The translations under genes were made by a program, and so were the position numbers. From contig NC_135770.1 of NCBI RefSeq assembly GCF_052425735.1, forward strand, positions 1,054,001 to 1,118,000: a DNA stretch of 64,000 nucleotides, given 5' to 3'. How positions within the stretch are numbered: the first letter of the stretch is position 1; every line of letters begins with the position of its first letter. Below the pieces are notes generated by a model that worked only from the letters and a program-made list of their open reading frames with translations, searched no databases and had not been told where the DNA came from. Shown here piece after piece: positions 9,344 through 39,365 of this stretch. This DNA comes from Oculina patagonica. Lineage: Eukaryota.

Positions 9344-11996
9344 TCACTGAGGATTTTGAGGACGTGTTCCTTGTAATCGAATAAATTCAAAGTAGTCGAT
9401 ATATCCATCGGAATTCAGGTCCCCTCTGTTTAGAACACGATCCACCATATCTGCAAACTGCTCCTCCGTAGCTGAATGTTCTGTTCCGGTCTTATGGTGT
9501 TCGAAGCCATGATACATTTCAAGGCCATCCAGTTTTTTGTTCCCGTCATAATCGTGGAGGGTAAAGTAATAGAATTGGGTATCCTCGTCGCTCAATGTGT
9601 CTACGTTGATGTCGGTTTCGTCTTTAAGATGCTCTTTGATGTGACTAAAAGAAATAAAAAAAGTAAAGAGGAAATTTATATTGGGACATTCCATTTTTAT
9701 CCGAACCCCCGCTGTGAAAGGCATATTTTATAGTAGGGTGACGACAAAACGAAACTTGTCGGAATCTGGATTTTAGAGTAAATGATGGGTGTCAGAATCG
9801 CCCTTTTACCCTGTAGAAGGGGGGTGTCGGAAACGCAATTTTTCATTATAATCACGATTTACTTTATTATCACAATTTTACCCAATATTAAGGGTGTCAA
9901 AATCGCAATTTAAAACAATATCAGGGGTGTCGGAATCGCCATTTTACCCAATATAGGGGTGTCAGAAGCTTAATTTGCCTAAAATCTTGGGTGTCGGAAT
10001 CTAAATTGGAAAAAGGGCACCTGTCAGTATAGTGCCTTTAACAGAGGGGGGGGGGGGGGGTGTAAAAAATAAATAGAATGTCTCATTTACCGTTTTCTCG
10101 TTTTCTGTCTTTTTTACAAAACCATTGAACCTATCTCTAGGGACTGTATGTGTATGTTGGTTATGAAACTTAATGCAATCAAACAAATTACTTCTGTCAG
10201 TGTGTGTTTAAATGACAAAACCGTGCCATCATTAAAAACAAATACGTCTCTCGGAAGTTTAAATTACAAGTTACAAACAATCAAGGTTAACTTTGAAAAG
10301 CAGCCTAAATATATAATAATGTTGTCCGTTCTGATTTTCTTCAATTCTTGTCCATTTGTACCTTCTATTTGTCCTGTTACAAAAATGTTTTTTCACCGTT
10401 TCAAAACGTTCTTCGAAAGTTCTGTTGGCCATGCTTATATTCCACTCAATTTTGTGGCCATTTTCTTTTGCACCATAACTGAGAAAATTCGCGCACGCTC
10501 ATTGGTCAAAGGCTATGGTCGATGACAGAGTCCATGAGAGACCATGACGTATTATAACCTGTAACGCAACGCAAGGAAAATTTCGGGAAAAAAAATGTCA
10601 CGACTTTTCCAAAAGACATAACCAAGCGAGCTGTAAAAAGGCAGCTTGAACATTAAGGAAGAAATTTTAACACATTCGTCGCCTTGGCTGTTTTTATGCT
10701 AAAGACGATAATGTCGTCAGACTACTGTCGTCAGACTAATGTCGTCAGACTAATGTCGTCTGGTTTAAAAACAGAACGCCTTTATGTAGACAGCTTTTCA
10801 GAAAAAAATAAAAAAAAGACTGGGTTCGACACTCGGAGGACACTGGACACTAAGGCGTAAAGCAATCAGACGTTAAAGGCGTCTGTCTTATTTACTGTTT
10901 TCATACTAGTTAACGACGTCCCGTTTTTATACTAGACGGCTTTAACGTCTGAGACGTTTAAGCTGTCCGACTAAAAAACAAATCAAATACATTTTCCATG
11001 GTCAACACTATTATAGATCATAGAGATGACGGCATAACATTTCCAAAACTCTGCAGTGACTGAAACCACTCGCCTAAAGGCTCGTGGTTCCACTTGTGTC
11101 AGTTGAACATTTTACGAAATCATTTCTAAAATCTTTAAAAGTGTACACCATGAAAAATTGTGGTCGAATTGTTAGAGTGATTCTAATCAAATGTTAGTGT
11201 GTCATAGTGCTTACTAATAACATGTAGTATTAGTGCGTGGCCAGTGACACAAAAAACAAAGAATAAAAAAACAAAAGAATTACTTACGCTATAGCGGAAT
11301 AAGAAATAGTATCCCGTATTATATAAAAAATATATATATATATGGTTGTATCTGACCTCTAAAAATGTTAATTTTTGTACCAAATTTTCGGCACCATTCT
11401 GTTTCCTTCTTCAGAAAAAAAAATGACTAAAAAAATATATTTAACAAATTAAGAACTTGTGACGGTCCCTAAGGGATAACTGGATACAATACAGTGTGTA
11501 TCATGCCACTATCTATTCAAAAAAACCGCTTTAAATGTTTCTATTTGGCTATTATCCGAGACACAGTCCTTTTAGATATAAAATTTGCAAAAAATTCAGA
11601 GACGTACACTATTTTGCGGAAAATGGCCATGGAAAACGACGAAAAAAATGTAATTAATGAAATTAACAAATTACAAAACAGGTGCTCGCTACTCTCTAAT
11701 CTATTCAGTGAGACGTATCATGCAAAATTGCTGCCTAAATATTGCCAGTTTAATTTTATAAGCGTTTTACATAGTTAAAGAGTTATTGACCTGAAAATAT
11801 CTAAATATATTTATAATTGAACGAGTTCTTAGTTTGAGTTTTACAGAGGAATAACTACTACTTACTCTCGATCGTGCGTGACTTCAGTTTCGTTCAGAGC
11901 TGGCAGAGCTGACTCGTGTTCTTCGTGGGCACGCACAAAGGAGAGAAGAGCGAGCGAGAACATACACACTTTGATGAACCTGTGAAGTAAAACCAT
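9344..11996 (-). CDS. MCFD2-like EF-hand protein, paralog A (2 exons)
   Basis: Exon 1, 11996-11866: MVLLHRFIKVCMFSLALLSFVRAHEEHESALPALNETEVTHDR (signal peptide). Phase-2 intron. Exon 2, 9644-9344: HIKEHLK...FYYFTLHDYDGNKKLDGLE...DLNSDGYIDYFEF...NPQ*. Confidence 0.9.
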
Positions 11997-12396
11997 CCTT
12001 CTTTACTTCTTTGCCGTGCGCTGCTTCGAACCTCTGCCATAAAACCCAATTGTAATATATTTTTGTCAAGATATCTTTATGAATACGTTTGGTCACTCAA
12101 TTGGTAGGTTCTACAAAGACAATGGCATGGTTCATTCCTTCGATTAAGTTGTGTCACCATGTGAGAGCTCTCGTCTTACATTTGCATATTTAGAGAGAGC
12201 CGCTAGATAACTACAGCTGAACCCCGATAACTCGAACCTTCAAGGGAAAACGAAAAAGGTTGAGTTATCGAGGAAAAAATAAGTAAGAAAATGAACTGAA
12301 GGGGAATTGACCATGAAAAAGGTTCGAGTTAGCGGGAGGTTCGAGTTATTGTGATTCAACTGTGTTTTCTTTTGTAAACGCGTACGTCTTTATGCT

Positions 12397-13289: not shown

Positions 13290-15369
13290 TCACTGAGGAT
13301 TATGGTGATGCGCATTTTGTACTTTAATAAATTCAGGATAGTCGATATATCCATCAGAATTTAAGTCTGCGGTGTCCAAAAAATAATCCACTGTTTCTGC
13401 ATTCTCCTCCTCTGTAAATCGATGTTCTGTTCCATTCTGATGGTGTTCTATGCCATGATACATTTCAAGGCCATCCAGTTTTTTGTTCCCGTCATAATCG
13501 TGCAGCGTAAAGTAATAGAAATGCATGTCTTCGTCGCTCAATGCATCTACGTTGATGTCCGCTTCATCTTTAAGATGCTCTTTGATGTGGCTAAAAACAA
13601 TAGAAAAACCGAGGAAATTAATATTTTCAATTCTTTTTCTTTTCTTTTTTTTTTTTTTACAAAGGCCACCATGAGGCAGAATTAACTGACCGTGTTGTGG
13701 TCTTGTAGATAGGTGGACATTGTATGGCCGAGGTTAAAGGGCCTGGAGGAGTAAAAGGGAAAGTGTGATGTACTGTCCTTTTACTGATAAATGGAGGTTT
13801 TAATCACAGGGACTGGTATATAAATATAAATTGGAATTAGGACAGGGATTTGGGCAAAATGTGGCCAGGGAAATGGGATTTATACCACTCCCCTCTCTTT
13901 AGGATCCCCAGAGTACCTCCGCCACAAGGCCAGGACCAAAACCCTGACCTCTGTTAAAAGGTGGCCATTAAAGAGAGCCAGAGGGGACCGTGAGTGGGAG
14001 GTTCGACTGGCTGCATTCTCAGGTGCTTATTGGTCAAGAGCTAGTTTTCACTGTCACGCAATCAAAAAATAAATTCGAAACTATTCAACTGCACAAGCTT
14101 TGAATTTCAAATATCACAGAAGATAAACTAAGTCTTAGGTCTGTGTGGTGTATCGCTCGCGAGTTATGTGACAAAACTCTCCACGCAAATTTATAAAGCT
14201 CAGTATGGAGACGCCATATTTGTGTCCTTCCTGGGGGCACAAATATAAATAATTAGCTTCCTTATTTATTCTTCTATGTTGCTTTCCCCCTTCTTGAGTA
14301 CCAGTATTTTCATTTTTACTGCTTCACCTCCCGCTTCGATTAACTTCACCTGTTAGAAAAGTACTTTCTTTAGCAGCCTAAATACTTGTAAAACATTTGT
14401 TGGGATAGGGGATTTGTTACGTGCGAAAGACTCGTGACCACGTGACCACTCATGAACACGTCAGCTTTTAACGCAGCCAAACCAAAATCATTTTATTTTT
14501 GCCAAAACATGAAAGCAAAAGTAAATTATTTTTCCAGCGCAGTATTTGTTTTGTCGTAGAGAATGCGCTGTTAATTCAACATGGCTAGATTTTTATTGGT
14601 AATATGCCTATAGAGAATTTCCCAGAGACCTCGTGTGTTGCGCGCGCAGTAAACGCCGACTGACCACGCCTGACTAGCTCTTTACACTGGCTTCGCGCTT
14701 CTCGTTTAACGACTTCAGGTATATATAAACCACTCCGAAAAGATATTGAAAAACTTAATATTTAGGTAATAACAAGAAAAACTGATTCAAAAGAGTTTGT
14801 ATGATGTGACGGTATTAAACAAAAGCGAACAATACAGTGCTAGCGAGCAATGTTAATAAAATGCGGCATATTGTGTCACCCGTTTTGCCGGGAAACGTTC
14901 TTTTGTTATATAGTTACTTAAACAAAAGATTTAATTGAGGTTTTTCAGAGTCGTTCTCGTCCCTAAGTTTTTACCTTTAATTTCGGCGGGAAGCGGACAA
15001 CGACAGCAAAATATGTAATAAAATTACAGAACGGATCTTTGTTCCGCAGTTTTAAATATACCACAAAAAATGTAAACATCTCCGCTTTGTACCCTGTGTG
15101 AAAAATCACTGTCTAAATACTGCCGGTTTTATAAGCATTTTTGCACAATAAAGATTTATTGTGCTGAAAATGTCAGCTATACATTTAAAAAAAAAATTGG
15201 ACGAATTCTGAGATTGAGTTAACGGCGGAGGAATAAATACTACTCACTCTCGGTCGTGCGTTACTTCTGACTCGTGCAGGGCTGACTTGTGTTCTCCATG
15301 GGCACGTACAAAGCAGAGAAGAGCGAGTGAGAACATACACACCGCAATGAACCTGTGTAGTAAAACCAT
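13290..15369 (-). CDS. MCFD2-like EF-hand protein, paralog B (2 exons)
   Basis: Exon 1, 15369-15248: MVLLHRFIAVCMFSLALLCFVRAHGEHKSALHESEVTHDR. Exon 2, 13590-13290: HIKEHLK...HDYDGNKKLDGLE...DLNSDGYIDYPEF...HHHNPQ*. Confidence 0.9.
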
Positions 15370-18405: not shown

Positions 18406-20116
18406 CTATTGAGGATTCTTTTCATCCTGCTTTGTGTTAGCGTTGGCTTCTTGTTCTGCTTCGTCACGTTTCTTCTGTGCGTCAACATATTCAGGATAAT
18501 CGATATACCCATCAGAGTCTAAATCATCCATGCTTAAAATCTCATCCACTATTTTCGCATTAGCCTCTTCAGATGTAGATTCTTTGTCTGTTACTCCCGT
18601 TTCGTTCTGATAATGACTTATGGCATGCATAAGTTCAAGGCCGTCCAGTTTTCTGTTGTTGTCGTAATCGTGAAGCCTAAAATAGTGGAACTGCAGATCT
18701 TCGTCGCTCATGTCTTCGTCCTCCTTCAGGTTTATTTCTTCTTTGAGATGCTCTTTGATGTGGCTAAAAGAAATCAATGAAAAATGTAAGAAAATCATTC
18801 ATTACTTATAGTATTGCCGTTACTGTAAAAACGGGCAGAATTCTCTCATGTTGATTGGTCGAGAGATGTGGTCGATGAGAGTATTAAAATAAGCTGAGTA
18901 TCAGGCCTTGCTAAGCCTGATACTCAGGTTAGTATTAAAAATGTAACCTGCAAAGAAACGCAGGAAATTTTCGAATAACTTTTATCTTGTGTGAAATGTC
19001 GTCGGTTCATGTCAAAACCGGAAATTTGCCAAATGTTGATTTTGAGACTTAGGGTGAAATTTCCACTGATGATAAACTCTACCATATAGAATCAGAAGAA
19101 TTTTCTTTAATTTTTATGTTACATGTTACGATCACCTAATAATTTTTTTATCGGTTTACTCTCACCGCGAATTTTGACAGTATAAACGCGCCATAGTGGG
19201 AAGATGACTCCTTTCTCGTATCCCGCGCGCGCACTGCCAAATAAAGCGTAAATTTGTAAGTTGGTTTCCTGTAATTGGTGCAAGCGCGGTTTCTCGCTCT
19301 TTTTGCTCCCGCCACGCGCGACTCGCACTTCTCGCTTCACGGTGCACGCTTCACGTTTCACGCGTCATGCAAGAGTGCCTCCGGCGATATGGTGACAAAA
19401 TTTGTAATAAATTATGGTGTCAAGTTACAGAACAGGTGCACTTCACTAAAGTTCTAAATAATAACAAAAATATAAATCACTCCTTTACGGTATTCTAAGA
19501 GCTGTATCTTGTATTTCATATACACAGAAACCGGCTTTACAAAAATTCAAACAAAATAAAGATTTTCAGTGGACAAATGTTGAAAGTTTGTTTGAATTGA
19601 ACGCGAGTTCCGCGTTCGAGTTAATAGACGGAGGAAAACGTAATTGCAGCTGCAATATAGAAAACAACACATAGCGAAACTGCTTTATTTATAACGCCTG
19701 CGTTTGCGAAAAGTTTGAGCTCGCTAGAGCTCGACTTCATCGACACTGGACGCTATGCAAATATATATTTTTTTACTTTTGCATAAAATACTTCACTATT
19801 AAATCGACCAAAATCTTCGATCGATACAATGAAAGTAACTCGTGCAGACCTATGTTACAGTTTTCGCTAACATGATTTGATTTAGAACATGTCATCAACG
19901 CTCTGATAGGTACGATTTTCAGTGCATTTGTTTCTGAGCTGTTATTAAACAACCTGCATGTGAGGCAGACTGTCTTAAATGTAAATTCACTTACTCTCGA
20001 TCGTGCGTAACCTTGGAATCGTGCAGAGCTGACTTGGGGTCTTCGTGGGCACTTGCAAAGTAGAGAACAGCGATCGAGAACATACACACACTGATCAAGT
20101 TGGGAAGAAAACCCAT
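18406..20116 (-). CDS. MCFD2-like EF-hand protein, paralog C (2 exons)
   Basis: Exon 1, 20116-19995: MGFLPNLISVCMFSIAVLYFASAHEDPKSALHDSKVTHDR. Exon 2, 18763-18406: HIKEHLK...LQFHYFRLHDYDNNRKLDGLE...DLDSDGYIDYPEY...EKNPQ*. Confidence 0.92.
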
Positions 20117-23700: not shown

Positions 23701-25883
23701 CTTCCGATAACTTGAGTGACAAAAGTTATATCCCTTTCCTCATATAGTTAAATTCTGCAATTTTATCCCAGATTCCTCAATTTTTTTTATTTCTCAAACC
23801 AATTCAATGTCCCTTGGCCAGGGACATTGTGTTGTGTTCTACTGTATCTAGATTAAAGTCAGGAACACCCAATGAGAGCCAGCAAAATCTGACAAAGAAG
23901 GCACAGATTGAGAGGTGAGGTGGCACAAGAGGTGGTCTGAGTTTCAGTATTGGCCAGGGACATTGTGTTGTGTTCTTGGGCAAGACACTTCCCTCACAGT
24001 GCCTCTCTACACCAAGGATTATTAATTGTTCTGGAAAACTGTCGAGAAATATGCTGGACCTCTAATGGACTAGCATGCAAGATTTCATGTCACCAATAAA
24101 ATTCACTCTTAAACAACAAATAACTCATCAAGTAAAAACAAAGAAAATTATAACTTACCCTGAAGGAGGTTTGGATACCCGATCTTAATTAGCATAGATT
24201 CTTACAACTGATTTTACTTCTCTTTTCATTCGGTTGTTTCAGTTAAGAAGATATAACAAACACAGTGTTTCATCGGCTATCCAAACACCTTGAATTTCAT
24301 CAAAAATACTCTGCTGCGGGTCACATTTTCAAATCTCTTCTTGGTGTTTGGATATCCCCATGAAACACTGTTGCTCGGGTTTGATATATTATGTAATAAA
24401 ACAATATACAATAAATTAGTTTTTGTACCTTACCATGTCAGTGATACCAGCAAAACCAAACAGAGCTAAAGAGCTGACGTAATCCTCTGAAACTATCAGA
24501 TAGCCAATAACTGGTGTTGCCAATATTCTGAGAGTGGATAGCAGGTTTGGTACTGTGAAAATGTCTTCTTTCTTCACAACAAGAAATGATCTAAGTCAGT
24601 TTTATTATTATTATTATTTTTTTTTATTATATTTTATAAACATAAGGTGATAGTTAAAGCTACAGTTTTGGTATGTATTTGAAGAAAAAAAAAGGGTAAA
24701 ATCTGCGTTCAAGCCCAGTCAAGTGGCCCATCAGGCCAGAGCTTATCCTGGTTTCTGTAGCATGAGTGAAGCGACTAGTACTATTACTACTCCCACCTGG
24801 ATGGGATGCTAGTCCATCCCAGGGTTATCCCCCAGCAGTAAAATTATTTGCTGGAACCCTTTATACACCCGGGCAAAGAGAGGCACTATGAGAGTAGTGT
24901 CTTGCCCAAGAACACAACATAGTGACCCTGGCTGTGGCTCAAACCTGGACCGCTTGATCCAGAGTCCAGCACAGTCTAACCATTAGGCCACCATGCCTCC
25001 GACATGATGCCCCCCTCAGAAAAACCCGATTTTTTCTTAGCCCCATCAGAAAAAATACCACTTTTTGCTCATTTTTTGCTTACCCCCTCAGAAAGAATCA
25101 AAGGTGTCAACATATTTCAGACCTCTTAAGAAAAATTCGTCAACAGGGTGGGGGGGGGGGGGGGGAATTTTTTTTGGAATGGCCCCAGAACTGCTTTCTT
25201 CACCATTAACGATTGAGGTAAGCAACCACCTTTCAATAATCTTCTGACTGACTCTGACCCATTGTTCAGGACATACTTCTTTATTTTAGCACTATTGAAT
25301 TGGTTGTATCCAATTTCAAGAATATTTTAAAGCATGTAACTTGTGGTTAAGGTTACAAAATATGAACATGATACTACTAAAGATATGTCACCAGAAAGTC
25401 TGAAACAGGTTCTGAAAATGGCATATGTTGTTCAAGAACCTCGTGGCATCTCCTCACCAAAATGTTCCAACAACAATTCCCCCCCCCCCCCTACCCCTCC
25501 CCACACGGAACACACCTTTTCGAATGTGATACACGGCTTTGTATATAACCTACCATTTCTTTCATTTGTTCGAGCTTCGCCTTTATTTTCCCAGCCCCTG
25601 GCTTTGTCTGTCCTCGTTGAAACTGAAATGCTGTAGATCTATAAGGCCTCAACCCTTTACAAAACACGGAAAAGTCTTCCAGAACACATCTGCTTCGCTG
25701 CCAAAGAATGCCTCCAGAAGTGCGATCTTTCGACGAGTAACGATACCCAATGAAGCTGAAGCTAGAGATAAAGGCAGCAGGCATTACATACTTGAATTTT
25801 GACGGAATAAAGTCAGGGCCAAAACAACTTTTTAGGGTTAAATTTAGGCGGAGTGCCTTGCAAGTTCTGCAGACACCCGCCAT
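20776..25883 (-). CDS. CRLS1: Cardiolipin synthase (CMP-forming), 7 exons
   Basis: Exons 25883-25554, 24571-24434, 23611-23482, 23188-23103, 22724-22656, 21836-21745 and 20857-20776 join in frame. They give [13 protein letters not shown], the CDP-alcohol phosphotransferase motif [10 protein letters not shown]...[11 protein letters not shown], and [16 protein letters not shown]. The N-terminus is basic and presequence-like. Confidence 0.93.
21489..21625. mobile_element. Palindromic MITE with 8-bp TSD
   Basis: ~53-bp arms GGATCAATTTAGGTTTCTGGGAAACTGCTCACCTACCCCTCCCCAAACCTAACA and its exact reverse complement. TSD GAAATCTA on both sides. Confidence 0.9.
23233..23360. other. Assembly gap (CRLS1 intron)
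   Basis: Run of N. Confidence 0.99.
24693..25000 (-). mobile_element. tRNA-derived SINE (family also at 49492-49757 +, and degraded at ~5790-5985, ~23930-24080, ~38140-38660)
   Basis: Reverse complement matches the 49492 copy: tRNA-like head GTGGCCTAATGGTTAG, TGTTGTGTTCTTGGGCAAGACACT core and ATGGACTAGCATCCCATCCAGG body. Confidence 0.8.
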
Positions 25884-25962
25884 CTTTAACCCTTTAGTCA
25901 CCAATCTTCTCCGTGCAAAACCTAAACAATGCGGAGGCCTGGGTCTCAGCACGAAAAGCAAC
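25884..25962. promoter_or_regulatory. Very compact bidirectional promoter region CRLS1/NDUFAF1
   Basis: 79 bp between the predicted divergent ATGs. Both starts sit in AA(G/C)ATGGCG, a YY1-like context. Confidence 0.6.
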
Positions 25963-28900
25963 ATGGCGTCTGGAAGTGGTATTATCAAAGGAGTTAAAGG
26001 TATTCTCCAAAAACCAGCCGTCAAAACGGTCGTCAAAACACTGTTTCCGGATCCTATGGCAAAATTCAAGTATTCAGAAGTGTTGTGGGACTTTAGGAAT
26101 AAGGAAAACCTTGAGCAATGGACGCTTATAACAGATGAGCAGTTTGGTGGTAAATCTACAGCTGAGTTTGTTCAAAGTCCAGGCGGTAAAGCTGTGTTTA
26201 GAGGGAATGTTTCCACTGATTTACCACCAGCTACGAATGTTAAATACAGTGGTATGTGCTCGATCAGATCACAGCCACAAAGGGTGAGTTCTGTAGTTGT
26301 TTATAGCCAACTAAGTTTGGGGACCAACGGACCAGGTATTTATAAAGGTACAATGTACCTAGGGCGGGGGGGGGGGGGGGGGACTCTGCTCCTCCTTTAT
26401 ATCCACCCCCTGGCTGGCAGAGGTGCCAACATAAAAAAATAGAAATCCAAGAGATTTCCAATTTTACATAAGGTAATCCTCTTCTCAACACCAAAAGCAG
26501 AGTAAAAATCAGAGCTCAATCTATTCAACCACAAAAACATGTCACATATCCAATAAGTTTAGGGCTTATTATCAGAATTCTAATTTATGGTAAATGATTT
26601 TATCGAGCACATTTGAGACCGAAATAAACTTCAATGTACCTGTCAGGTCTCTTTTGTTACAAGGGCGAATAAGTGAGCATCTGAGATTTGACCCAAACAA
26701 TTTCACACAGATAACGTAGCCCCACAAATAGACCCATATAGTAAAACGTAGATTGGCAAGGGTCTATAATACTCTGGTGGTCTGGTGGATTAAGCCAATT
26801 TTGAGTGGTGGTCTGCAGGCACACTCTTTAATATCTGGCAGTTTTGGTCTTCAGGGCAGTCTGCAGATTGTACAAACCCTATAATAGACCCTTATTGGTT
26901 GCTGGGCAGGCATAATAACTGAATTTTCTAACTGAGAGACAAACAATCTGCAACACAATAGACAAAGATCTCTTTCAAGCTGCATCGTCAATGTGGAATT
27001 GTTTGGAGCTAATCTCACATATATTTGGGAAGGGAAAGAATTCAAGTGCACAAAGAAAGACACTTGCTACTCAGGCTAATCCCATTTAGTGCTCTCACTC
27101 CTTGTGAAATGAAACTGTCGAGAAATATTTTTATTAAGTAAAATGTTTTAGAAACGTTCTCTGGTTAAAAATTTAAAAATATAAGCTTTCGGCTGCCAAA
27201 CTGCAGCCTTTAACGAATGATAAAAATGGCGCGAATGAATAAATATATAGGGTAAAAATGTGTGAAAAAATTACAGAATAAAAATGCGTAAAAAGGTGAC
27301 AAGAAAAATAGTGAGAATATGATAATAAAAGAGTACTATTTTAAAAGAATAGAATATTGTGGAGGTAATGACCTAGCATTGTTGTCCGCTTCAGTTGTCA
27401 TGGCAGTGTGCCATGACTCAAGAGTTTTTCGCACGCGATAGTCTCCTTTGTCAATGACTCTTGCATTTTTGAAATCAATTTGATGGTCATTCATCCATGC
27501 ATGGTTTGCAATGTTCGATCCTTTGTTACAATGTTTGACGTTTCTGATGTGTTCTTTTCTTCGCGTCTGTAGACATCTGCCGGTTTCTCCAATGTAACTC
27601 CAATTACAGTCATTACAAGGAATCTTGTAGACCACATTTGTTTGAAGGTGGCTGGGAGGTCTGAATTTTGGTGAAGGAAACTCTTGGTGAAGGGTTCTGT
27701 GGGGTCTGGTGACGACACGAATTCCATTGTTTTGAAGCAATCTTTTAAGCGGTTCGGTGAGGCCATTGATATAGGGCAGACAAGCCAAGTTAAATGATTC
27801 TGATGGCTCGACCCACTTAAAAAACAAACCAACAAGTTCCTCCGGAGAGGGAATTGTTTCTGTAGTGCGTTTTTTCTTTAAGATGTTAGAGATAATTGAT
27901 TGGGGGTAGCCATTCGCTTTTAAGGCATCAGAGATATGTTTGACTTCACTCGATTTTGCGTCTGCGGTGCTTGGGAGGTTACACGCGCGGTTCAGAAGAG
28001 TGGAAGCTGTGCTGATTTTGTGTTTCTTCTCATGATGCGAGTTAAAGTCTAAATACCTGTCTGTGTGTGTAGGTTTTCTGTATACTTCGATGGTAATTTT
28101 GCCATTTTTTCTGTTGACGAGGGTGTCCAGGAAGGCGATTTGGCCATTGCTTTCAGTTTCGATGGTAAAGGAGATCTTGGGGTCGATGGAATTCAAAGTG
28201 TCGTGGAAGGCTGAAATGGCGTCTCTCTTGATGATGACAAAGCTGTCGTCCACATATCTTTTCCAAATTTTGGGTGGTACCGTGGAATTAATCAGAGCTG
28301 AATCTTCAATTACCTCCATGCAGAGGTTAGCTACAACAGGGCTAACCGGGCTACCCATTGCACAGCCGTGGATCTGTTTGTAGGTACAGTCGTTGTAGAC
28401 GAAGTAGTTGTTTGAAAGAACAAATTCCAAGAGGGAGATGATGTCATCAGTAGTGAGATTTGTTCTGGAGGTTAATGTAGTGTCATTATTGAGTTTATCG
28501 CGAATGTAGGTGCAAGCTTTCTGGACAGGGATTGCTGTAAAAAGGGAAACAACATCAAACGAGAGCATTACTTCATCATCAGAAATTTCCATATGAGCTA
28601 CTTCATTAGCAAAGTCCGAAGAGTTGAGGACGGAATGGCCATTACTATTCTGGATGGGCGACAGAATATCTGTGAGGAATTTAGAAGTGTTGTAGAGGGC
28701 AGAGCCAATGCAAGAAACGATTGGACGAAGAGGGTAGCCAGTTTTATGATGTTTAATTGAGCCACGGATTGCAGGAGGAGCTGCATCGGTTGAGCGCAGT
28801 TTGCGGTAGGTTGAATCATTGATCTTGTTCTGTTTCTTCAGGTTAAGAAGCCTGTTGTTTAGTTCCCTTTCAACCTTTAAGAACGGGGATTTTTGGACAA

Positions 28901-31699
28901 GTTGATAGGTGGAGCGATCGCTTAGTAGAGACTCCATTTTGTCATCGTAGTCTGTTCTGTCTAAGACAACAAAACAATTCCCTTTGTCAGCTTTCATTAT
29001 GACCCTTGAGGAATCTTCTTTCAGCTTTTTGAGTGCTTTCTTTTCATCTTTGGTGGTGTTACTATGAGATGGTAAACTAGCTCTGTGAAGAATTGAAGCA
29101 GTAGTGGTTCGTATGTTGTCTTTGGTGTCTTCTGGTAGACGGACGATGGCAGCCTCAATCTCACAGACGATATCTTTGGTTGGGATCTTTGATGGAGTCG
29201 GAGCAAATTTCGGTCCTTTCTCGAGAATGGAGCGTTCAGCCGAAGTAAGCGGTTTGTTAGACAGGTTGACAACCCAGTTTTGACAACCCAGTTTTCCTTG
29301 GCTTGTCTGCCCTATATCAATGGCCTCACCGAACCGCTTAAAAGATTGCTTCAAAACAATGGAATTCGTGTCGTCACCAGACCCCACAGAACCCTTCACC
29401 AAGAGTTTCCTTCACCAAAATTCAGACCTCCCAGCCACCTTCAAACAAATGTGGTCTACAAGATTCCTTGTAATGACTGTAATTGGAGTTACATTGGAGA
29501 AACCGGCAGATGTCTACAGACGCGAAGAAAAGAACACATCAGAAACGTCAAACATTGTAACAAAGGATCGAACATTGCAAACCATGCATGGATGAATGAC
29601 CATCAAATTGATTTCAAAAATGCAAGAGTCATTGACAAAGGAGACTATCGCGTGCGAAAAACTCTTGAGTCATGGCACACTGCCATGACAACTGAAGCGG
29701 ACAACAATGCTAGGTCATTACCTCCACAATATTCTATTCTTTTAAAATAGTACTCTTTTATTATCATATTCTCACTATTTTTCTTGTCACCTTTTTACGC
29801 ATTTTTATTCTGTAATTTTTTCACACATTTTTACCCTATATATTTATTCATTCGCGCCATTTTTATCATTCGTTAAAGGCTGCAGTTTGGCAGCCGAAAG
29901 CTTATATTTTTAAATTTTTAACCAGAGAACGTTTCTAAAACATTTTACTTAAATATTTTTATGTTCATTTTTGCATGCAATTATTGTCTCAGCTTCCTCT
30001 AGGGACTTCTACATCACACTATGGTTTTTAACTCTTGTCGCCTTTCATGCTAGACACTCAATACAACCAATATTTCACGCTCATATTGCCAAGTTTAATT
30101 TTTCTAGCATTTTGTTTGCAAAATAGCCTATTTGCTTCGGTGTTGATGTAATTTTTCTCTTGTTATTGCTTGTATGTACGGTAAGTTTTTCATTACTCGT
30201 CTCCAATAAACAACTGGTCATGTCCTTACTTCATCACTCTGACTGTGTCTGTTGTTTTTGGACTGCTTATTAGAACATAAACGTTTTCTCTGCTTCAGAA
30301 TGCAGTGACGTAGCAGAGAAAAGTGTTATTCAGTCATCCAAGACAAGTAGATTTTCCTGCTGGAACTAAGTAACTTTTCATTCTCACTTGCACAATTCAG
30401 TATGTATCATCTAAAAATCGTTCGTTTCTCTCTCTCTTTTTTCATCCAGGATTGGAGTGGGGATGTGATTACACATGATATAGCAGATTATGATGGTATT
30501 GTTATAAGATTACGAGGAGACGGTAGAACCTATACATTTAATGTTCAAACAAAGAGCATCAGGGACGATGATGTACACCAGTCCTTTTTTCACACAAGAG
30601 GAGGACCATTCTGGGAGATAGTCAAGGTAAGGAAGAGTACATGACTGTGTATAGCCTGGGCCAAATGAGGATGAGAGTTGATGAGAGCGCAAACTCTCAC
30701 TTTCGTTTGGTATGGAACTCTCATGCACTCTCATCGACTCTCATGCGCTCTCATCCACTTTGAACGTGCTCAAATTTTTCGTGAGAGTCAATGAGAGTTT
30801 GACAGACTTTTGTTCTCATTTGGTCGAGTTGATGATAGTCGATGAGAGTTGACGAAAAACGCTCATGAGAGTCAACTCTCATCAACTCTCATCCTCCTTT
30901 GGCCTGGGCTTATGAGGCAAAGAAAGTTGTCTAGAGCAGGTGGCTAATCAGGCTGGGCACAGTAGATGGTTTTTGTCATTAGTTTTATTAAATTTCTGTT
31001 GCTTTTTTAAACTAGTTCACTTTTACAAATGTGAATCTCGTTTGCAACAAAATTTATGTAGTGTGCAGCAGGCTTTAGCTTTTAGTTCTACAGCATGAGG
31101 TTTCTAGGAATATTGCTATTCCCTTCCCTCAGGTGGGTTGCAACTCCCTTTTCACTGCTGGTTCTGACTGCAGGGTCATAATGACATACATGCACAAATT
31201 GAACAGTCAAGAGATGAACACAACTCAATGACCGTGGCAACGGCTCAAACCTGTAACCTATGATCCATTGTCACTTTAACACCAGCATCATGCCCCACCC
31301 CCCCTGCTCCCCACTCTACCTACTTTCTTCCAGAGGAGGAAAGGCATTTTTATTTCCCCTTTCCCCTTCGAAAACGAAACAAAAACGCCCGATCACAGCT
31401 TAAAGTAACCAACACTAACCATTAGTTGACCAATGCCTCCTATGAATCATAGTTATATCCTAGTTTCTAATCCCATGAATCTACACATCTCTTTACAGGT
31501 GCCATTCACCAAGTTTGTTCTAACCAATGCAGGATACTTACAAGATCAGCAGATGCATTTTCCGAGAATACGCACTGTAGGCTTCACACTAGCAGACCAT
31601 AACAAAGGCCCATTTCACCTGGAAATTGACTACATTAAACTGGTCATGTTTATGTACCAGCCTAAACATTTCAAATACCACTATGAGAGCAAGGTCTGA
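25963..31699 (+). CDS. NDUFAF1: Complex I assembly factor CIA30/NDUFAF1, 3 exons
   Basis: Exons 25963-26283, 30450-30626 and 31499-31699, all phase 0. They give LWDF..W..ITDEQFGGKS, FRGNVST, SGMCSIRS, IRLRGDGRTYTFNV, TRGGPFWEIVKVPFTKF and GFTLAD..GPFHLEIDYI, which form the CIA30 domain. Confidence 0.93.
27336..29282 (-). CDS. Penelope-type reverse transcriptase + GIY-YIG endonuclease ORF (uninterrupted, lacks native start)
   Basis: KADKGN, PLRPIVS, SFDVVSLFT, GCAMGSPVSP, RYVDDSF, FLDTLV, VYRKPTHTDRYL, and VVYKIPC..C..SYIGETGR. The first ~40 aa of the listed 688-aa ORF come from the inverted arm. Confidence 0.92.
   Translation of the reverse strand, partial: QNWVVNLSNKPLTSAERSILEKGPKFAPTPSKIPTKDIVCEIEAAIVRLPEDTKDNIRTTTASILHRASLPSHSNTTKDEKKALKKLKEDSSRVIMKADKGNCFVVLDRTDYDDKMESLLSDRSTYQLVQKSPFLKVERELNNRLLNLKKQNKINDSTYRKLRSTDAAPPAIRGSIKHHKTGYPLRPIVSCIGSALYNTSKFLTDILSPIQNSNGHSVLNSSDFANEVAHMEISDDEVMLSFDVVSLFTAIPVQKACTYIRDKLNNDTTLTSRTNLTTDDIISLLEFVLSNNYFVYNDCTYKQIHGCAMGSPVSPVVANLCMEVIEDSALINSTVPPKIWKRYVDDSFVIIKRDAISAFHDTLNSIDPKISFTIETESNGQIAFLDTLVNRKNGKITIEVYRKPTHTDRYLDFNSHHEKKHKISTASTLLNRACNLPSTADAKSSEVKHISDALKANGYPQSIISNILKKKRTTETIPSPEELVGLFFKWVEPSESFNLACLPYINGLTEPLKRLLQNNGIRVVTRPHRTLHQEFPSPKFRPPSHLQTNVVYKIPCNDCNWSYIGETGRCLQTRRKEHIRNVKHCNKGSNIANHAWMNDHQIDFKNARVIDKGDYRVRKTLESWHTAMTTEADNNARSLPPQYSILLK
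29870..29904 (+). ncRNA. Degenerate hammerhead-like motif in Penelope 3' repeat (mirror copy ~27182-27216, minus)
   Basis: TCGTTAA-A-GGCTGC-agtttg-GCAGCC-GAAA-GCTTA. Stem II, GAAA and a palindromic stem III are present. The core is altered and stem I is not evident. Confidence 0.4.
30654..30910. mobile_element. MITE with GATGAGAGTT internal repeats
   Basis: GCCTGGGCCAAATGAGGATGAGAGTTGATGAGAG ... CTCTCATCAACTCTCATCCTCCTTTGGCCTGGGC. Confidence 0.8.
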
Positions 31700-31786
31700 G
31701 TTTTTACACAAACGACTTAGTGCCAGTTAATTTTTTGGGGTTAAGCTTCTGTCTCTGGGCCCAAGGATGTTGTTACAGGAATGGAA

Positions 31787-33597: not shown

Positions 33598-34719
33598 ATG
33601 GAGGATATAAAACCAAAGGAAGACGTTCCCAGTGCCAAGCTTGTGTGTGAAATGAAAGATGTACTAAACAATTTGATGTCCCAGCTTTCTGGTTTTGGAC
33701 TTACAGTCCACGTGCTTCAAAACCGCGCAGTTGTCACGGAGCGAAATGAACTCGGAACGTTTAACGTCGTGGACGGAGAAGCTGCCTTGCAGTTTGTGAA
33801 TCAACCTGAACACGCTGACAAAATTATTTGCTTCAACTCTGAGCGGTTCTACTGTCATACCGAGTACCTCGTTCTCAGAAGTCAGTATTTTCGAGCTTTG
33901 CTGTGCGGTGTTTACCGCGAAACAAGCATGGACTTGATTTCTATTCACCTCCCCGCGCCTGGAAATGTTCAGCCCATTTTGCACTTTATGTATTCGGGTA
34001 TTGCCGATGGCGCGCTGTTTGAACCCAATGAAATCTTCAACACGATACAAAATGCAAATTTTTTGGGCGTGGATGAATTGCTGAACAAAGCTGCCGAGCA
34101 TTTTGCTACAAAGTGGAAAGTCTTCGCTGTTTCTCCACTGTTTAGACGAAGTATCGTTGATTCGGAATTTGTATCCTCCATTCTAGAACTTGGAACAAAA
34201 AACAATGTTTTCAACGAAGGAGACAAGCTGAGAATTGTCGTTTTGTGGAACGAAGAAGAAGGTACTGAGCGAAGTTTTCCTGAGTCGACTCGTCTTTTAA
34301 TGGAGCACAAATGCTTAGAGAAAACTGGCATCGCGGATTTAGAATGGGCGCTGGACAAGAAACCTGGCCTGTTCAACTCTTTGGATCAATCCACGTTTCG
34401 CGTCGTTTACCAACGCGCGATACAAGATTCCACGCGCGCTCGCGAGAACACGCGCGTCCACGAGGAGAAGATCAAAAATCTTTCTCAGTGCGTGCGCACG
34501 CTGACAAGACAGCTCGAGGAGGTCCGCTGCACCAGGTGCCAGCTGTTTCTTCCACGAGCAGCCATGAAAACGAGAACTTGCATTGTGACGCGCCATATTG
34601 GAGAGTACGTGGTAAACAAGGGATGGAGTTGCTGCAGACAGCTTATCAAACGAAGCAAGGGTTGTAAACCAGTGAGTCTTTCCAGGCACTGCATGTCTTT
34701 GAATACAAGATCAAGATGA
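33598..34719 (+). CDS. BTB/POZ-domain protein with coiled coil and C-terminal Cys/His zinc-binding motif, single exon
   Basis: ADKIICFNSERFYCHTEYLVLRSQYFRALL...ILHFMYSG...ANFLGVDELL is a BTB domain. The C-terminus reads CTRC..C..H.G..WSCC..GC..H. First ATG at 33598. Confidence 0.88.
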   Translation: MEDIKPKEDVPSAKLVCEMKDVLNNLMSQLSGFGLTVHVLQNRAVVTERNELGTFNVVDGEAALQFVNQPEHADKIICFNSERFYCHTEYLVLRSQYFRALLCGVYRETSMDLISIHLPAPGNVQPILHFMYSGIADGALFEPNEIFNTIQNANFLGVDELLNKAAEHFATKWKVFAVSPLFRRSIVDSEFVSSILELGTKNNVFNEGDKLRIVVLWNEEEGTERSFPESTRLLMEHKCLEKTGIADLEWALDKKPGLFNSLDQSTFRVVYQRAIQDSTRARENTRVHEEKIKNLSQCVRTLTRQLEEVRCTRCQLFLPRAAMKTRTCIVTRHIGEYVVNKGWSCCRQLIKRSKGCKPVSLSRHCMSLNTRSR

Positions 34720-36026: not shown

Positions 36027-39000
36027 ATGTCTTCTTTTCGATGTGCTTGTGGACTTCTAGCGTTGTTTACTCTCTTCTGTTTTGTTATTTCTGACGATGC
36101 TCAAGCTCCAGTGCAACACAATCCTCTGCACGATTCAAAACACACACACGACAAAGAGTAAGTGCGAAGGATCATTATTTTAATACCCTTATTAAGTTTC
36201 TTATAGTTTATCCAGGCTATATTTATTAACAGAAATGTATACAATATAACTTATAAGCGGTAACTGTAGTTAGCGTGTTGTGATTTATAATGCGTGCTGT
36301 TCTAGATCTTTTGGTTAAGATTTTACCGAACGTACGTATTTCTATGTCTGAACAGGCTTTTAAACGTACACGTGTACCTAAATTCATGGTTATTAAATGG
36401 CCAATAAGCATTTATATATTTCCAGTTTTGAATTATATCAAAAACAGACATTTCAGTTGCTGTAGGAGAATTTGGGTAACATGTAATTAAATAGTGTTAA
36501 TATTTCTATTAGTTTTTGTATTCTTTTCCTAAGCTTCTGCTCATCACATGACTGCATATATATTGTGTGAGAAGTTACATGTATCATAACTCCTTTCATC
36601 AGCAGTCTAGTGCTAAAAATATACAAAAAAAGGTTAAATACCTCATAATATTTGTAATAGTAGACTGCTTAAACAGGTTTGGTATAGTCCTATTATTCCT
36701 TCGAACCACGCAATGTAACAATTTGGGCCATTCCATATCGAGGGGGGCATAAGGGTTTGCGGTGATGTGGTTTCAATGCGTTATTTTTGGTGCAGTTTTG
36801 CGGTAGTTTTTATTTTAACCTGCAGTATTGCAGTTTTAGAAGACTAAGCGGTGTGCAGTTATTATAACTTTAAGGTCGCAGTAGACAGTGAAGAAATAGT
36901 CTGCGGTGATACAACTCTGTTATTTTTCCACCGGATACTTTTGAATCCCGTTGTTTTTCTTCAGTTAAACAAGCTCGAGCCGAGTGTTTGGTTTTCTTGC
37001 ATACCAGGCTACACAATCGGGGGCTATTATTATACAAATTAGCCCTGTGGTTTGTAATTTGCAGCCAATTCCAGTTTATACTTGATGTGAACAATCGTTT
37101 TATCGAATGAAACGTTGACCTCATGACATTCGAGGCCAGATATTCATCTCAGATCAAGTCTTATCTACCCTCGCTGGTCATTTGAAACTTTCATGCAGTT
37201 TGCGGTTTTTAGATCCCCCTTACACCCCCTACTGCAATTGATGAGGTAGGTCAAAATTTACCCTCAAAGAAAAAAGATGATACCCCTTTTAGAAATTACC
37301 TGATTTTTTATAAAAGTAACTTTTCCCTAACCCCTTTAGAAATATTCAAAAGGTCAAAGAATGCCAACAGGGCTCCCCTCAAAAAAGACCTTCAAAGCCT
37401 CTTCAGAAAATCTCATCTATAGGGTGTGGGCCCGGGGTGTATATATAAAAAGGAATGCCCTCAAAATGGTTCACAATAAAGAAAACCTTTTATTGGACAT
37501 TTTAGTTTATTGTATTGCTGTTCAATTTTGCTCATTATATTTACACAATATACCACAAAATTTGTAAAAATGTACAGCAATACCACATACTAAAATGGAT
37601 ATTACAGTGAATACCCTGTTTCTCAAACCTCCAAGGGAACTGAAAATGGTTGGAGAAATCAAGGAGTTCAAGTAATCAGTGGTAACATGCAGTGCTCGAC
37701 TGAGAGAAGGGAAACTACCCAGGGGGGTACTTGCAGTATACTTGACGGGGAGGGGGCATCTGACGGAACTTCATATTGCGAACCCAAAAAAATACGTGAG
37801 CCTGAAATTTTACACCCAAAAAAATACCTGGCATCAAAATTTTCTACCCCAAAAAGTACAAGACCAAGCACCTCGATACTGATTTATTCAATCAAACAGA
37901 CTTTAAGACCTAAAAAACTACATGACAGATCTCTTGACCTAAAAAAATACGAAGGGTGTAAATTTTCGACCCAAAAAAATACGTCGGACCTCCCCGTCAT
38001 GTATACTGCAAGTACCCCCCCCCCCCTTGGGGGAAACTACTTTTGATTTGAGTTACCTGTATCATGAGATTCCAAAAATTGAGGGGTTAAGAAATCAGGA
38101 TTTCACTGTTAAGAAAAAGGTTAAGTCTTTGTTTGATCAAAACAGGCCCACCAGGCTGTTGTTTACAGTATCTCTGGTTTCCATAGCATGAAGCAACTAG
38201 TGGACGGGGACAGGGGGTGGGAGCCCGGGAGAAAAGGGGTGGGAAGCGGGAGAAGGGAGGGCGAGATGCAGGATTCATCTAAGGTGGTGGGAACCTGGAG
38301 AAAATAGTAAACTTTCGAAACATTTTGTTAAATTTTGCAATGGATCTGGGATAATTAGAAGAGAACTGCTATGGAAAGGGTCAGGAGGAGGGAGTAAAAG
38401 GCACGGGAGCTGGGACGTTCAGACCCACCTGTTCCCCTCCACAAACAAGGAGTATTTCTACTCCACTTGGATCAGATACTAGTCCATTGCAGGATATACT
38501 CCCAAGCATTTCATTCAAATTTGCAGGTGCCTAATGCCTCTCTCCCTTGATGGGAAGAGGCACGGTGTGAGTACAAAGTTTCACCCTTAACACAGCACAA
38601 TGACCCAAGCCAGAGCTCAAACCTGACCACTTGATCTGAAGGCTGGTACACTAACCGCTGTTCCACATTTATTAAAAACTAGCAATTAATAGTATATTGC
38701 AATTCCTGAGTTTTGATTTGTTAACAGGCAATGGTATATGAGTTCATGAATATATCATCCACCACAAACATGGTAGCTGATACCCGTCAATGAAAACAGC
38801 TGGGGAGCTTAAATATAACAATTCTTTGGGGTTTTTTAATCAAACAATTATTCCACTCGCACTTGTTGGATATGTGACCATTGTACCATCTCATATCCAA
38901 TGCACGCTCGTGTAATAATTGTTAAATACCCTCCACAAAGTAAAGGTCGGTAAATTGGTTGCTTGGTTGGCTGGTTGGTTGACTGACTGACTGTCTGAGT

Positions 39001-39365
39001 GACCGACGGACGGACTGATTGATTGATTGATTGATTGATTGATTTGTCTGTTTGTTTATTGACACTGTAGGCATATTAAAGAGCATCTCAAGGATGAGGT
39101 TGAATTGAAGGATGAGCAAATGTCAGATGAGGATTTGCAATTCCACTACTTTAAACTGCATGATTATGACAATAACAATAAATTGGATGGTATAGAGCTC
39201 ATGAACGCAATGACACATTATCACGATGAAGAGGATGAAGGCAAAAACCCACAGTACACTGATGATGAAATGGGACATATGATAGATCAGATTTTAGAAG
39301 AAGACGACCTTAACAAAGATGGCTATATTGATTATCCAGAATTTGTGGCATCCCAGAAGTCTTAA
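36027..39365 (+). CDS. MCFD2: Multiple coagulation factor deficiency protein 2 homolog (likely true ortholog), 2 exons
   Basis: Exon 1, 36027-36157: signal peptide + HDSKHTHDKE. Exon 2, 39071-39365: HIKEHLK..MSDEDLQFHYFKLHDYDNNNKLDGIEL..MIDQILEEDDLNKDGYIDYPEFVASQKS. Length and C-terminus are closest to vertebrate MCFD2. Confidence 0.93.
38952..39060. repeat. Compound tetranucleotide microsatellite (GGTT/GACT/GACG/GATT/GTTT)
   Basis: Visible directly and abuts the MCFD2 splice acceptor. A related (CAAT/CAAC)n tract lies at 52330-52415. Confidence 0.85.

What the first reader, a model, noticed from the sequence alone, without database searches (positions are those of the whole stretch)
9344..39365. 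Four-member MCFD2 family: canonical gene plus three tandem paralogs sharing a novel NPQ C-terminus
Seen: four intact two-exon genes with the same phase-2 intron, each with a signal peptide and two canonical EF-hand loops. The three minus-strand copies end in NPQ despite tails of different length and sequence (TRPQNPQ, HHHNPQ, DEKNPQ). Each carries an N-glycosylation sequon (NET, NGT, NET) that the plus-strand copy lacks. Established: MCFD2 is the Ca2+-dependent luminal co-receptor of LMAN1/ERGIC-53 and is single-copy in human. Positions equivalent to the human disease residues (D81, D89, D122, D129, Y135, I136) look retained in all four. Inference: either a set of interchangeable cargo adaptors for ER export (for example skeletal matrix, mucus or cnidocyst proteins) or secreted Ca2+-binding proteins, with NPQ as a sorting or binding motif.
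Basis: partly seen in the sequence, partly recalled or inferred. Interest (0 to 1): 0.8.

Follow-up and report, generated by a model that had tools for sequence, protein, structure and literature searches.

The report
Coral-specific MCFD2 paralog cluster
Next to its ordinary MCFD2 gene, the stony coral Oculina patagonica keeps three extra, intact, selected copies from two coral-only subfamilies, so corals have diversified this secretory-pathway calcium-binding adaptor, but what the copies do is untested.

Summary
The window (Oculina patagonica) has four intact two-exon MCFD2-family genes. All share one phase-2 intron, a signal-peptide-like start and two canonical EF-hand loops. The three minus-strand copies end in NPQ.

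The three paralogs are not one set.
- c3 belongs to an old subfamily "B". It is found at the same syntenic place in Porites (complex clade) and in Pocillopora, Orbicella and Oculina (robust clade). Its dN/dS is 0.04-0.11.
- c1 and c2 belong to a younger, faster subfamily "A" (dN/dS 0.25-0.46). A was found only in some robust corals, and it is spliced and expressed in Orbicella.

NPQ is conserved only in A, as a His-rich tail ending in PQ (20 of 27 distinct tails). In B it occurs only in Oculina and a few close relatives. A more consistent mark of A and B than NPQ is an N-glycosylation sequon directly after the zinc-binding His99-x-His101 loop. It comes with changes at residues that are otherwise invariant in MCFD2 (K78, H101). 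c1's own sequon lies elsewhere, in exon 1.

The assembly gap lies in an intron of the neighbouring CRLS1 gene and touches none of the four genes.

Function is inferred only: MCFD2-like luminal adaptors or secreted calcium/zinc binders. RefSeq already names c3 and its Porites, Pocillopora and Orbicella relatives "MCFD2 homolog". I found no paper on them. Interest is moderate.

The parts
9344..9644 (-). c1 (subfamily A) exon 2: HIKEHL lid, two EF-hands, tail TRPQNPQ plus stop
   Evidence: gene model; (EF-hand_7; MCFD2 best PDB hit, 6e-16)
11866..11996 (-). c1 exon 1: start codon, signal-peptide-like core, NET sequon (residue 35), GTAAGT donor, phase 2
13290..13590 (-). c2 (subfamily A) exon 2: NGT sequon in the loop between the EF-hands, tail HHHNPQ
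   Evidence: 100% = ACROYT_G039283; AF2 model, top 20 PDB folds all MCFD2
15248..15369 (-). c2 exon 1 (signal peptide), GTGAGT donor, phase 2
18406..18763 (-). c3 (subfamily B) exon 2: NET sequon in the loop, long acidic tail ending DEKNPQ
   Evidence: (identical to RefSeq XP_078351490.1, 'MCFD2 homolog')
19995..20116 (-). c3 exon 1 (signal peptide), GTAAGT donor, phase 2
36027..36157 (+). c4 (canonical MCFD2) exon 1 (signal peptide)
39071..39365 (+). c4 exon 2: canonical MCFD2 core with H99-Y-H101 intact, no sequon, ends ASQKS; internal GKNPQY in the loop between the EF-hands
   Evidence: 3e-27 to human MCFD2; 90-94% to other scleractinian MCFD2
11997..12177 (-). about 180 bp upstream of c1 exon 1 that still aligns with the equivalent block of c2 (15370-15551): conserved 5'UTR / proximal promoter
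   Evidence: one 481-column alignment at 75.7% identity, covering 11721-12177 and 15099-15551: this block plus exon 1 and the first ~145 bp of the intron; the rest of the introns and spacers no longer align
7469..8350 (+). DHHC palmitoyltransferase gene, synteny anchor downstream of the A/B array
   Evidence: 91% to the DHHC next to the array in L001
20759..24577 (-). CRLS1 (CDP-alcohol phosphatidyltransferase) exons between c3 and NDUFAF1; the assembly gap 23233-23361 lies in one of its introns
25741..31705 (+). NDUFAF1 (CIA30) exons, synteny anchor between the paralog array and canonical c4

Best explanation
Shown. The locus is a stepwise tandem expansion of MCFD2, the soluble two-EF-hand luminal co-receptor of the ER-Golgi cargo receptor LMAN1/ERGIC-53.
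- c4 is the canonical ortholog.
- c3 belongs to an old scleractinian subfamily B. B sits at a fixed syntenic place (canonical - BTB - NDUFAF1 - CRLS1 - B - DHHC - RIOX1) in both complex and robust corals and is under strong purifying selection.
- c1 and c2 belong to a younger subfamily A. A arose beside B in part of the robust corals, evolves about 3-5 times faster in protein sequence, varies in copy number, and is spliced and expressed in Orbicella.
- All copies keep the signal peptide, every Ca2+ ligand and the invariant HIKEHL 'lid' histidines, and none has a KDEL-type or membrane anchor.

Inferred. The products are Ca2+-folded soluble proteins of the early secretory pathway that still work like MCFD2. 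They would dock on LMAN1 and present or release a different set of cargo. The regulatory face is remodelled: the Zn2+ ligand His101 is replaced, an N-glycan sequon sits next to it, K78/N86 are changed, and in A the His-rich C-terminal tail is capped by N-P-Q. Any copy that no longer binds LMAN1 would be secreted by default. NPQ is best read as the conserved cap of the A-type His-rich tail, inherited from the A/B ancestor. It is not a motif common to all paralogs.
For: Identity:
- PDB sequence searches.
- AF2 model of c2 with pLDDT 78; its 20 best PDB folds are all MCFD2, TM 0.8-0.93 by target.
- The nearest ESM Atlas clusters are all MCFD2.

Subfamilies (tree): A+B clade 100/100; A 100/100 on a long stem; A plus the robust-coral B genes 98/98; canonical coral genes form a tight cluster.

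Names: c3 = XP_078351490.1. B occurs in Porites lutea (XP_073249227.1), Pocillopora and Orbicella. A occurs in Orbicella (XP_020627733.1).

Synteny: the Porites lutea chromosome is colinear with the window and lacks A. A is also absent between B and DHHC in four other assemblies. A is present in L001, in L002 (plus a pseudogene) and in Orbicella L009 (plus a fragment).

Selection: dN/dS is 0.04-0.11 for B and 0.25-0.46 for A.

Expression: the Logan contig L012 aligns to the Orbicella genome in two blocks with a 1236-bp intron removed at the expected junction, and three JGI contigs carry the intron-less ORF. P0204 shows the same in another species.

Residues: H51, H55, all EF-loop ligands and the disease positions are conserved. 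K78 (100% in canonical) becomes R in B and T in A. H101 becomes Q or K. The sequon at position 102 is present in 100% of B, 87% of A and 17% of canonical sequences.

Zn2+ His cluster (H51/H55/H99/H101) and the lid: Watanabe et al. 2024, PMC10944485. MCFD2 lacks a retrieval signal and is secreted without LMAN1: PMC10317151.

Tails.
Against: - No test of LMAN1 binding, localisation or cargo was possible.
- The retained disease residues are mostly structural or Ca2+-binding, so they show an intact fold, not an intact LMAN1 interface.
- Residues invariant in canonical MCFD2 from sponge to human (K78; in A also H75; E127/D128) are changed, which could equally mean the LMAN1 or cargo surface is lost.
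- The AU test does not reject a tree in which all B genes form one clade with A as its sister (p = 0.25). 'A arose from within robust-coral B' therefore rests on gene presence/absence and the shared Q101, not on the tree alone.
- Expression of the Oculina copies themselves was not seen directly.
- Absence of B from sea anemones rests on named hits and one Nematostella locus, not on whole-genome searches.
Confidence: 0.6

Rival explanations
1. The paralogs no longer bind LMAN1. They are constitutively secreted, N-glycosylated Ca2+/Zn2+-binding proteins that act outside the cell (mucus, calcifying fluid, signalling), as vertebrate MCFD2 does when LMAN1 is missing.
For: - There is no retention signal, and MCFD2 is secreted when it is not held by LMAN1 (PMC10317151).
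- Canonical-invariant surface residues are changed (K78, N86, H101, E127/D128).
- The sequon is conserved, and A has a His-rich tail.
Against: - The N-terminal HIKEHL lid is disordered in free human MCFD2 and ordered only on full-length ERGIC-53. It is invariant in A and B, which suggests that the same partner is kept.
- The held supplementary text of the Oculina skeletal proteome paper contains no MCFD2 or EF-hand entry. This is weak evidence, because the files may be incomplete.
Confidence: 0.3
2. NPQ has no function of its own. It is simply the inherited end of an ancestral A/B tail, and it persists because few mutations have hit three codons.
For: - A and the Oculina-type B share AATCCTCA(G/A) followed by a stop, which is consistent with descent.
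- Most B tails have lost it, and one close relative truncates it to NP-stop.
- c4's unrelated loop also drifts among NPQ, NPH, SHQ and TPQ, so such triplets are easy to reach in this His/Gln/Pro-rich composition.
Against: - In A the residues just before the end vary (TRPQ, HHH, HAHD, HVHE, ENPH) and the 3' flanks are unalignable (about 46-54% identity). Yet 20 of 27 distinct tails end in PQ and 11 in NPQ, across lineages separated by dS of about 1.
- Oculina-type B copies keep NPQ while the preceding residue changes (K, T, A).
Confidence: 0.35
3. The copies are assembly or haplotype duplicates, or decaying pseudogenes.
For: - A second, 95% identical c3-like protein exists on a 10.7-kb unplaced Oculina contig, probably a haplotig.
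- A-type pseudogenes occur in other species.
Against: - c1, c2 and c3 differ by 26-45% in protein sequence.
- All have open frames and intact splice sites, and dN/dS is 0.04-0.46.
- Orthologous arrays occur in several other genomes.
Confidence: 0.02

Closest known systems
Human MCFD2 (PDB 2VRG, 3A4U, 8JP4/8JP5), the Ca2+-dependent soluble partner of LMAN1/ERGIC-53
   Same: - Signal peptide and no retention signal.
- An N-terminal lid with H51/H55.
- Two canonical EF-hands.
- All residues hit by F5F8D missense mutations.
- Same fold.
   Different: - c1-c3 replace the invariant K78 and the Zn2+ ligand H101.
- They carry a sequon at position 102 (c2, c3) and have extended tails.
- A has a loop between the EF-hands that is 4 residues shorter, and H75 is changed to Y.
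- Human has one gene; Oculina has four.
Canonical cnidarian MCFD2 (Nematostella, Actinia, Exaiptasia, Porites and Acropora 'MCFD2 homolog'; window c4)
   Same: - Same two-exon structure with the phase-2 intron.
- Same neighbourhood: RIOX1 lies next to the single Nematostella gene.
   Different: - Canonical genes are 90-94% identical among stony corals and end in ASQKS.
- A and B form a separate clade with 100/100 support on a long stem.
RefSeq 'MCFD2 homolog' entries: Porites lutea XP_073249227.1, Pocillopora XP_058941669, Orbicella (P0017) = subfamily B; Orbicella XP_020627733.1 = subfamily A
   Same: They are orthologs of c3 and of c1/c2 respectively, with the same synteny, sequon and tail type.
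   Different: - They are database names only. I found no paper that separates them from canonical MCFD2.
- Oculina has two A copies; Orbicella has one plus a fragment.
CREC family (Cab45/SDF4, reticulocalbin, calumenin): other luminal EF-hand proteins of the secretory pathway
   Same: They are soluble, have a signal peptide, bind Ca2+ and take part in cargo sorting.
   Different: CREC proteins have six EF-hands and often an HDEL-type end. They are not the best hits for any of the four genes.

Membership tests
MCFD2 family | Sequence closer to MCFD2 than to any other EF-hand protein | tested here: met
   c4 scores 3e-27 and c1 6e-16 to human MCFD2, against about 5e-8 and 2e-7 for the next family. 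The nearest Atlas clusters are all MCFD2.
MCFD2 family | Fold: EF-hand pair preceded by short lid helices | tested here: met
   AF2 model of c2 has pLDDT 78 (over 90 across the EF-hands). The 20 best PDB matches are all MCFD2 chains, TM by target 0.8-0.93. c1, c3 and c4 were not modelled.
MCFD2 family | Two canonical Ca2+-binding loops (positions 1, 3, 5, 9, 12) and the residues mutated in F5F8D | tested here: met
   D81, D83, N85, D89, E92, D129, N/D131, D133, D137, E140, D122, Y135 and I136 are kept in all four copies and in 92-100% of each subfamily; Pfam EF-hand_7.
MCFD2 family | Signal peptide; soluble; no KDEL/HDEL end and no membrane span | tested here: met
   Hydrophobic N-terminal core followed by small residues, and ends of NPQ or QKS. 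This is by inspection only; no signal-peptide predictor was available.
MCFD2 family | Gene structure shared with cnidarian MCFD2 (phase-2 intron just before HIKEHL) | tested here: met
   Exon 1 is 131 or 122 nt (remainder 2 after division by 3) in all four copies. The second exon begins at HIKEHL, preceded by a separate signal-peptide exon, in the coral loci L001-L005. The Orbicella A intron is confirmed by a spliced transcript. The Porites and Nematostella genes also carry an intron, with homology beginning at the same point.
MCFD2 family | Conserved Zn2+-binding His cluster H51/H55/H99/H101 (Watanabe 2024) | tested here: not met
   c4 has all four. c1-c3 keep H51, H55 and H99, but H101 is K (c1) or Q (c2, c3). 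Half of the A sequences also lose H99. Porites-type B keeps H-Y-H. So the site is degenerate in the three paralogs.
MCFD2 family | Canonical-invariant surface residue K78 (100% from sponge to echinoderms and human in this sample) | tested here: not met
   R in 100% of B and T in 89% of A.
MCFD2 family | Ca2+-dependent 1:1 binding to the LMAN1/ERGIC-53 lectin domain, and cargo (FV/FVIII-type) binding | not testable with these tools
   No complex prediction or binding assay was available. Papers that list the interface residues were not held.

The most novel reading that the evidence does not exclude
Stony corals evolved private LMAN1 co-receptor subunits. B arose at the origin of Scleractinia and A later in some robust corals. 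These subunits would route lineage-specific secretory cargo (skeletal matrix, mucus or similar). An N-glycan beside the remodelled zinc site, and in A a His-rich NPQ-capped tail, would act as a pH/Zn2+-controlled latch for cargo release. This would be the first case of cargo-receptor diversification through paralogous soluble adaptors.
Probability: 0.15. Interest if true: 0.7.

Novelty: new variant of a known kind. Interest (0 to 1): 0.42.

Why it matters
MCFD2 is treated as a single-copy, vertebrate-centred co-receptor whose only well-studied job is exporting a few glycoproteins with LMAN1. A paralog kept at one syntenic place and under strong constraint since before the robust/complex coral split (at least 245 Myr; abstract of PMC5730576) shows that the adaptor itself can diversify. 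So does a second, faster-evolving offshoot that is expressed.

The paralogs are natural variants of the recently described zinc-lid region: H101 is lost, a glycan site is added, and A has a His-rich tail. They could be used to test how Ca2+, Zn2+ and pH control cargo capture and release.

For coral biology they are candidate components of a specialised secretory route. No link to calcification or mucus is shown yet.

Tried and rejected
- Literature: searches for MCFD2 or 'multiple coagulation factor deficiency' together with coral terms found nothing relevant.
- Supplements: the held supplements of the Oculina skeletal proteome and the Stylophora cell atlas have no MCFD2, LMAN1 or EF-hand entry. 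A Pocillopora spatial-expression paper has no held supplements.
- Interface residues: the papers that list the LMAN1-MCFD2 interface (PMC2840101, PMC7193514) are not held. I therefore could not score interface conservation. Instead I compared columns invariant in canonical MCFD2 with A and B.
- AU test: it did not reject monophyly of B (p = 0.25), so the nesting of A inside B is not proven by the tree.
- Histidine content: A has 8.4% His against 6.0% in B and 6.4% in canonical. The whole family is His-rich, so this is only a modest distinction.
- P0207 looked like a full-length transcript of the c1 ortholog, but it is an unspliced read-through.
- Earlier notes of this scan hold nothing on MCFD2 or LMAN1 in this genome.
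- Haplotype or assembly duplication was rejected.
- c4's exact protein was not among the listed database hits, so its annotation status is unknown.
Full report
**What is in the window.** The genome is Oculina patagonica: c2 is 100% identical to ACROYT_G039283, and c1 matches ACROYT_G039282. I rebuilt the four genes from the sequence.
- Each has two exons joined by a GT-AG intron that falls after the second base of the codon preceding HIKEHL (phase 2). Exon 1 is 131 or 122 nt.
- c1: 11866-11996 and 9344-9644, minus strand, 143 aa.
- c2: 15248-15369 and 13290-13590, minus strand, 140 aa.
- c3: 19995-20116 and 18406-18763, minus strand, 159 aa.
- c4: 36027-36157 and 39071-39365, plus strand, 141 aa.
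- All start with a hydrophobic, signal-peptide-like segment followed by small residues. This is by inspection; no predictor was available.
- Pfam finds the EF-hand pair in all four.
- The best solved-structure match for both c4 (3e-27) and c1 (6e-16) is human MCFD2; the next family is at about 1e-7.
- An AlphaFold2 model of c2 (pLDDT 78, over 90 across the EF-hands) has MCFD2 chains as its 20 best PDB matches.
c4 ends in ASQKS.

**The assembly gap.** The gap at 23233-23361 is 3.1 kb upstream of the c3 start codon and 12.7 kb from c4, so it is outside all four models.
- It lies inside the neighbouring CRLS1 gene, on the minus strand.
- CRLS1 exons on both sides (matches at 23097-23222 and 23465-23626) follow the same order and orientation as in an ungapped Porites lutea chromosome.
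- The exon just below the gap has its own polypyrimidine-AG acceptor 43 nt from the gap edge and a GTAAGT donor.
- The gap is therefore intronic. The scaffold join between the paralog array and c4 agrees with conserved synteny. I did not fill it.

**Two subfamilies, not one.** Database searches with c2, c4 and c3 and a maximum-likelihood tree of 78 sequences give three groups.
- Canonical MCFD2 (c4) is 90-94% identical among stony corals and about 79% identical to Nematostella.
- Groups A (c1, c2) and B (c3) together form a clade with 100/100 support on a long stem.
- B contains the RefSeq 'MCFD2 homolog' entries of Porites lutea, Porites evermanni, Pocillopora, Stylophora and Orbicella. It also contains c3 itself (XP_078351490.1).
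- A is monophyletic (100/100) on a long branch and groups with the robust-coral B genes (98/98).
- An AU test does not reject A as sister to all B (p = 0.25).
- Within A, c1 pairs with an ortholog from another source (P0002, 100/94) rather than with c2. The c1/c2 duplication therefore appears to be old (dS 0.52), if P0002 comes from another species; its source is not known.

**Synteny dates the events.**
- In Porites lutea (complex clade) the gene order is canonical MCFD2 - BTB - NDUFAF1 - CRLS1 - B - DHHC - RIOX1. The window is colinear with it exon by exon, except that Oculina has c1 and c2 inserted between B and DHHC.
- A is also missing between B and DHHC in four other coral assemblies (L003, L004, L005, L008).
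- A is present as one copy in L001, one copy plus a pseudogene with stops in L002, and one copy plus a fragment in Orbicella.
- B thus predates the robust/complex split, which is put at 245 Myr or more in the abstract of PMC5730576.
- A is most simply a later duplicate of B within robust corals. This is supported by the shared Q at position 101.
- Nematostella has a single MCFD2 next to RIOX1 and no second copy within 10 kb. Named sea-anemone hits are all canonical. This suggests, but does not prove, that B is specific to Scleractinia.

**The copies are functional genes.**
- Pairwise dN/dS on exon 2 is 0.04-0.11 within B and 0.25-0.46 within A.
- A is transcribed and correctly spliced in Orbicella. 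A Logan contig (SRR6255820) aligns to the genome in two blocks with exactly the 1236-bp intron removed. Three JGI contigs carry the same intron-less 143-codon ORF.
- Another species gives a 145-aa spliced A transcript.
- Several B proteins in the collection are also full-length spliced forms from about 1-kb contigs.
- Between c1 and c2 only the exons and about 180 bp upstream of exon 1 still align, which points to a conserved proximal promoter.

**What distinguishes A and B from canonical MCFD2** (human numbering).
- All Ca2+ ligands, the disease positions (D81, D89, D122, D129, Y135, I136) and the lid histidines H51 and H55 are conserved in every group.
- K78, invariant in canonical MCFD2 in this sample, is R in all B and T in most A.
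- N86 becomes R or K.
- H101 is one of the four histidines that bind Zn2+ and hold the N-terminal lid over the cargo site in human MCFD2 (PMC10944485). It is Q in robust-coral B and Q or K in A.
- The next residue is N of an N-x-S/T sequon in 100% of B and 87% of A, against 17% of canonical sequences.
- A additionally has H75Y, a loop between the EF-hands that is 4 residues shorter, and a His-rich tail.
Those of c2 and c3 are the conserved loop sequon. c1 and its ortholog P0002 have lost it. c1's NET lies in exon 1, next to a 3-residue insertion.

**The NPQ end.**
- Among 27 distinct A tails, 20 end in PQ (11 NPQ, 6 HPQ, 2 DPQ, 1 RPQ). Two more contain NPQ followed by a read-through.
- The residues just before the end vary, and the 3' flanks no longer align (about 46-54% identity), although these lineages are about dS 1 apart.
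- In the c2 model the last helix runs to the His run, and the final NPQ is low-confidence coil (residues 138-140, pLDDT below 50).
- In B only three of 28 distinct tails end in NPQ: c3, the Oculina haplotig copy and P0149.
- The closest other genome (L001) has AATCCT-TAA-TGA, that is, the Q codon has turned into a stop.
- A and Oculina-type B share AATCCTCA(G/A)-stop, so the motif is probably inherited from their common ancestor. It is maintained in A and mostly lost in B.
- It is a real, lineage-restricted feature. Its function is unknown. A Pro-containing cap that protects or presents the His-rich tail is only a guess.

**Mechanism.**
- Established knowledge: MCFD2 folds on Ca2+, binds the LMAN1 lectin domain 1:1, has no retrieval signal of its own, and is secreted when LMAN1 is absent (PMC10317151).
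- c1-c3 keep everything needed for the Ca2+-dependent fold. They also keep the lid segment, which in human MCFD2 is ordered only on full-length ERGIC-53.
- I therefore favour MCFD2-like luminal adaptors with an altered regulatory and cargo face. B is the better candidate; A is more derived.
- The main rival is default secretion as glycosylated Ca2+/Zn2+-binding proteins.
- Neither could be tested here. Interface-residue papers were not held, and no complex prediction was available.

**Novelty.** The genes are in public annotation (c3 and several orthologs as 'MCFD2 homolog'; c1 and c2 as hypothetical proteins). I found no paper on MCFD2 paralogs in corals. The finding is a real, moderately interesting family expansion with conserved distinguishing features.

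Noticed in passing
window 33595-34719 (+): The single-exon BTB-domain gene between NDUFAF1 and c4 is inverted relative to Porites lutea, while all flanking genes are colinear. The best tblastx match (82% identity) pairs the window's plus strand with the opposite strand of L015.
   Followed up: partly
L007:12942-20240 versus L008: Two contigs of the same ENA assembly (ERZ25067868) carry the same B gene. One of them has a Maverick/Polinton-like block (YqaJ, Pox_VLTF3, rve integrase, DJR-like capsid, PLA2) where the other has DHHC, so the insertion appears to be haplotype-specific.
   Followed up: no
L002:11036-12406 and L009:20434-20523: Degenerate A-type copies lie downstream of the intact A gene in two Orbicella-like genomes (exon 2 with in-frame stops; a short fragment). 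This shows birth-and-death turnover of subfamily A.
   Followed up: partly
L001:7210-7554: The B ortholog in the closest other genome ends ...ETNP, followed by TAA and then TGA. The terminal Gln codon of NPQ has become a stop just before the ancestral stop.
   Followed up: yes
window 39071-39365 (c4), loop GKNPQY: Canonical coral MCFD2 has an NPQ-like triplet inside the disordered loop between the EF-hands. It drifts among NPQ, NPH, SHQ, APQ, TPQ and NHH in other corals, the same kind of variation as in the A tails. This is probably compositional coincidence.
   Followed up: partly
proteins P0151 (Rhopilema) and P0154 (Hydra isoform X1): Medusozoans have a second, very divergent 'MCFD2 homolog' (35-44% identity, stem length about 2 in the tree). 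This looks like an independent MCFD2 duplication in another cnidarian lineage.
   Followed up: no
window 11866-11996 and 19995-20116: The GenBank models for c1 (132 aa) and c3 (148 aa) start at an internal Met, which truncates the signal peptide. The RefSeq model of c3 (159 aa) and my models use the upstream ATG.
   Followed up: partly
window 27336-29750: A Penelope-like retroelement ORF (reverse transcriptase plus GIY-YIG, 688 aa) lies on the minus strand inside the NDUFAF1 intron. Its C-terminal 150 codons are duplicated in inverted orientation at 29280-29750.
   Followed up: no
protein P0094 (XP_078356116.1, 10.7-kb Oculina contig): A second c3-like protein, 95% identical and with tail ...AKQSETNPQ, sits on a short unplaced contig. 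It is probably the other haplotype. NPQ is kept although the preceding tail differs by an indel and several substitutions.
   Followed up: partly
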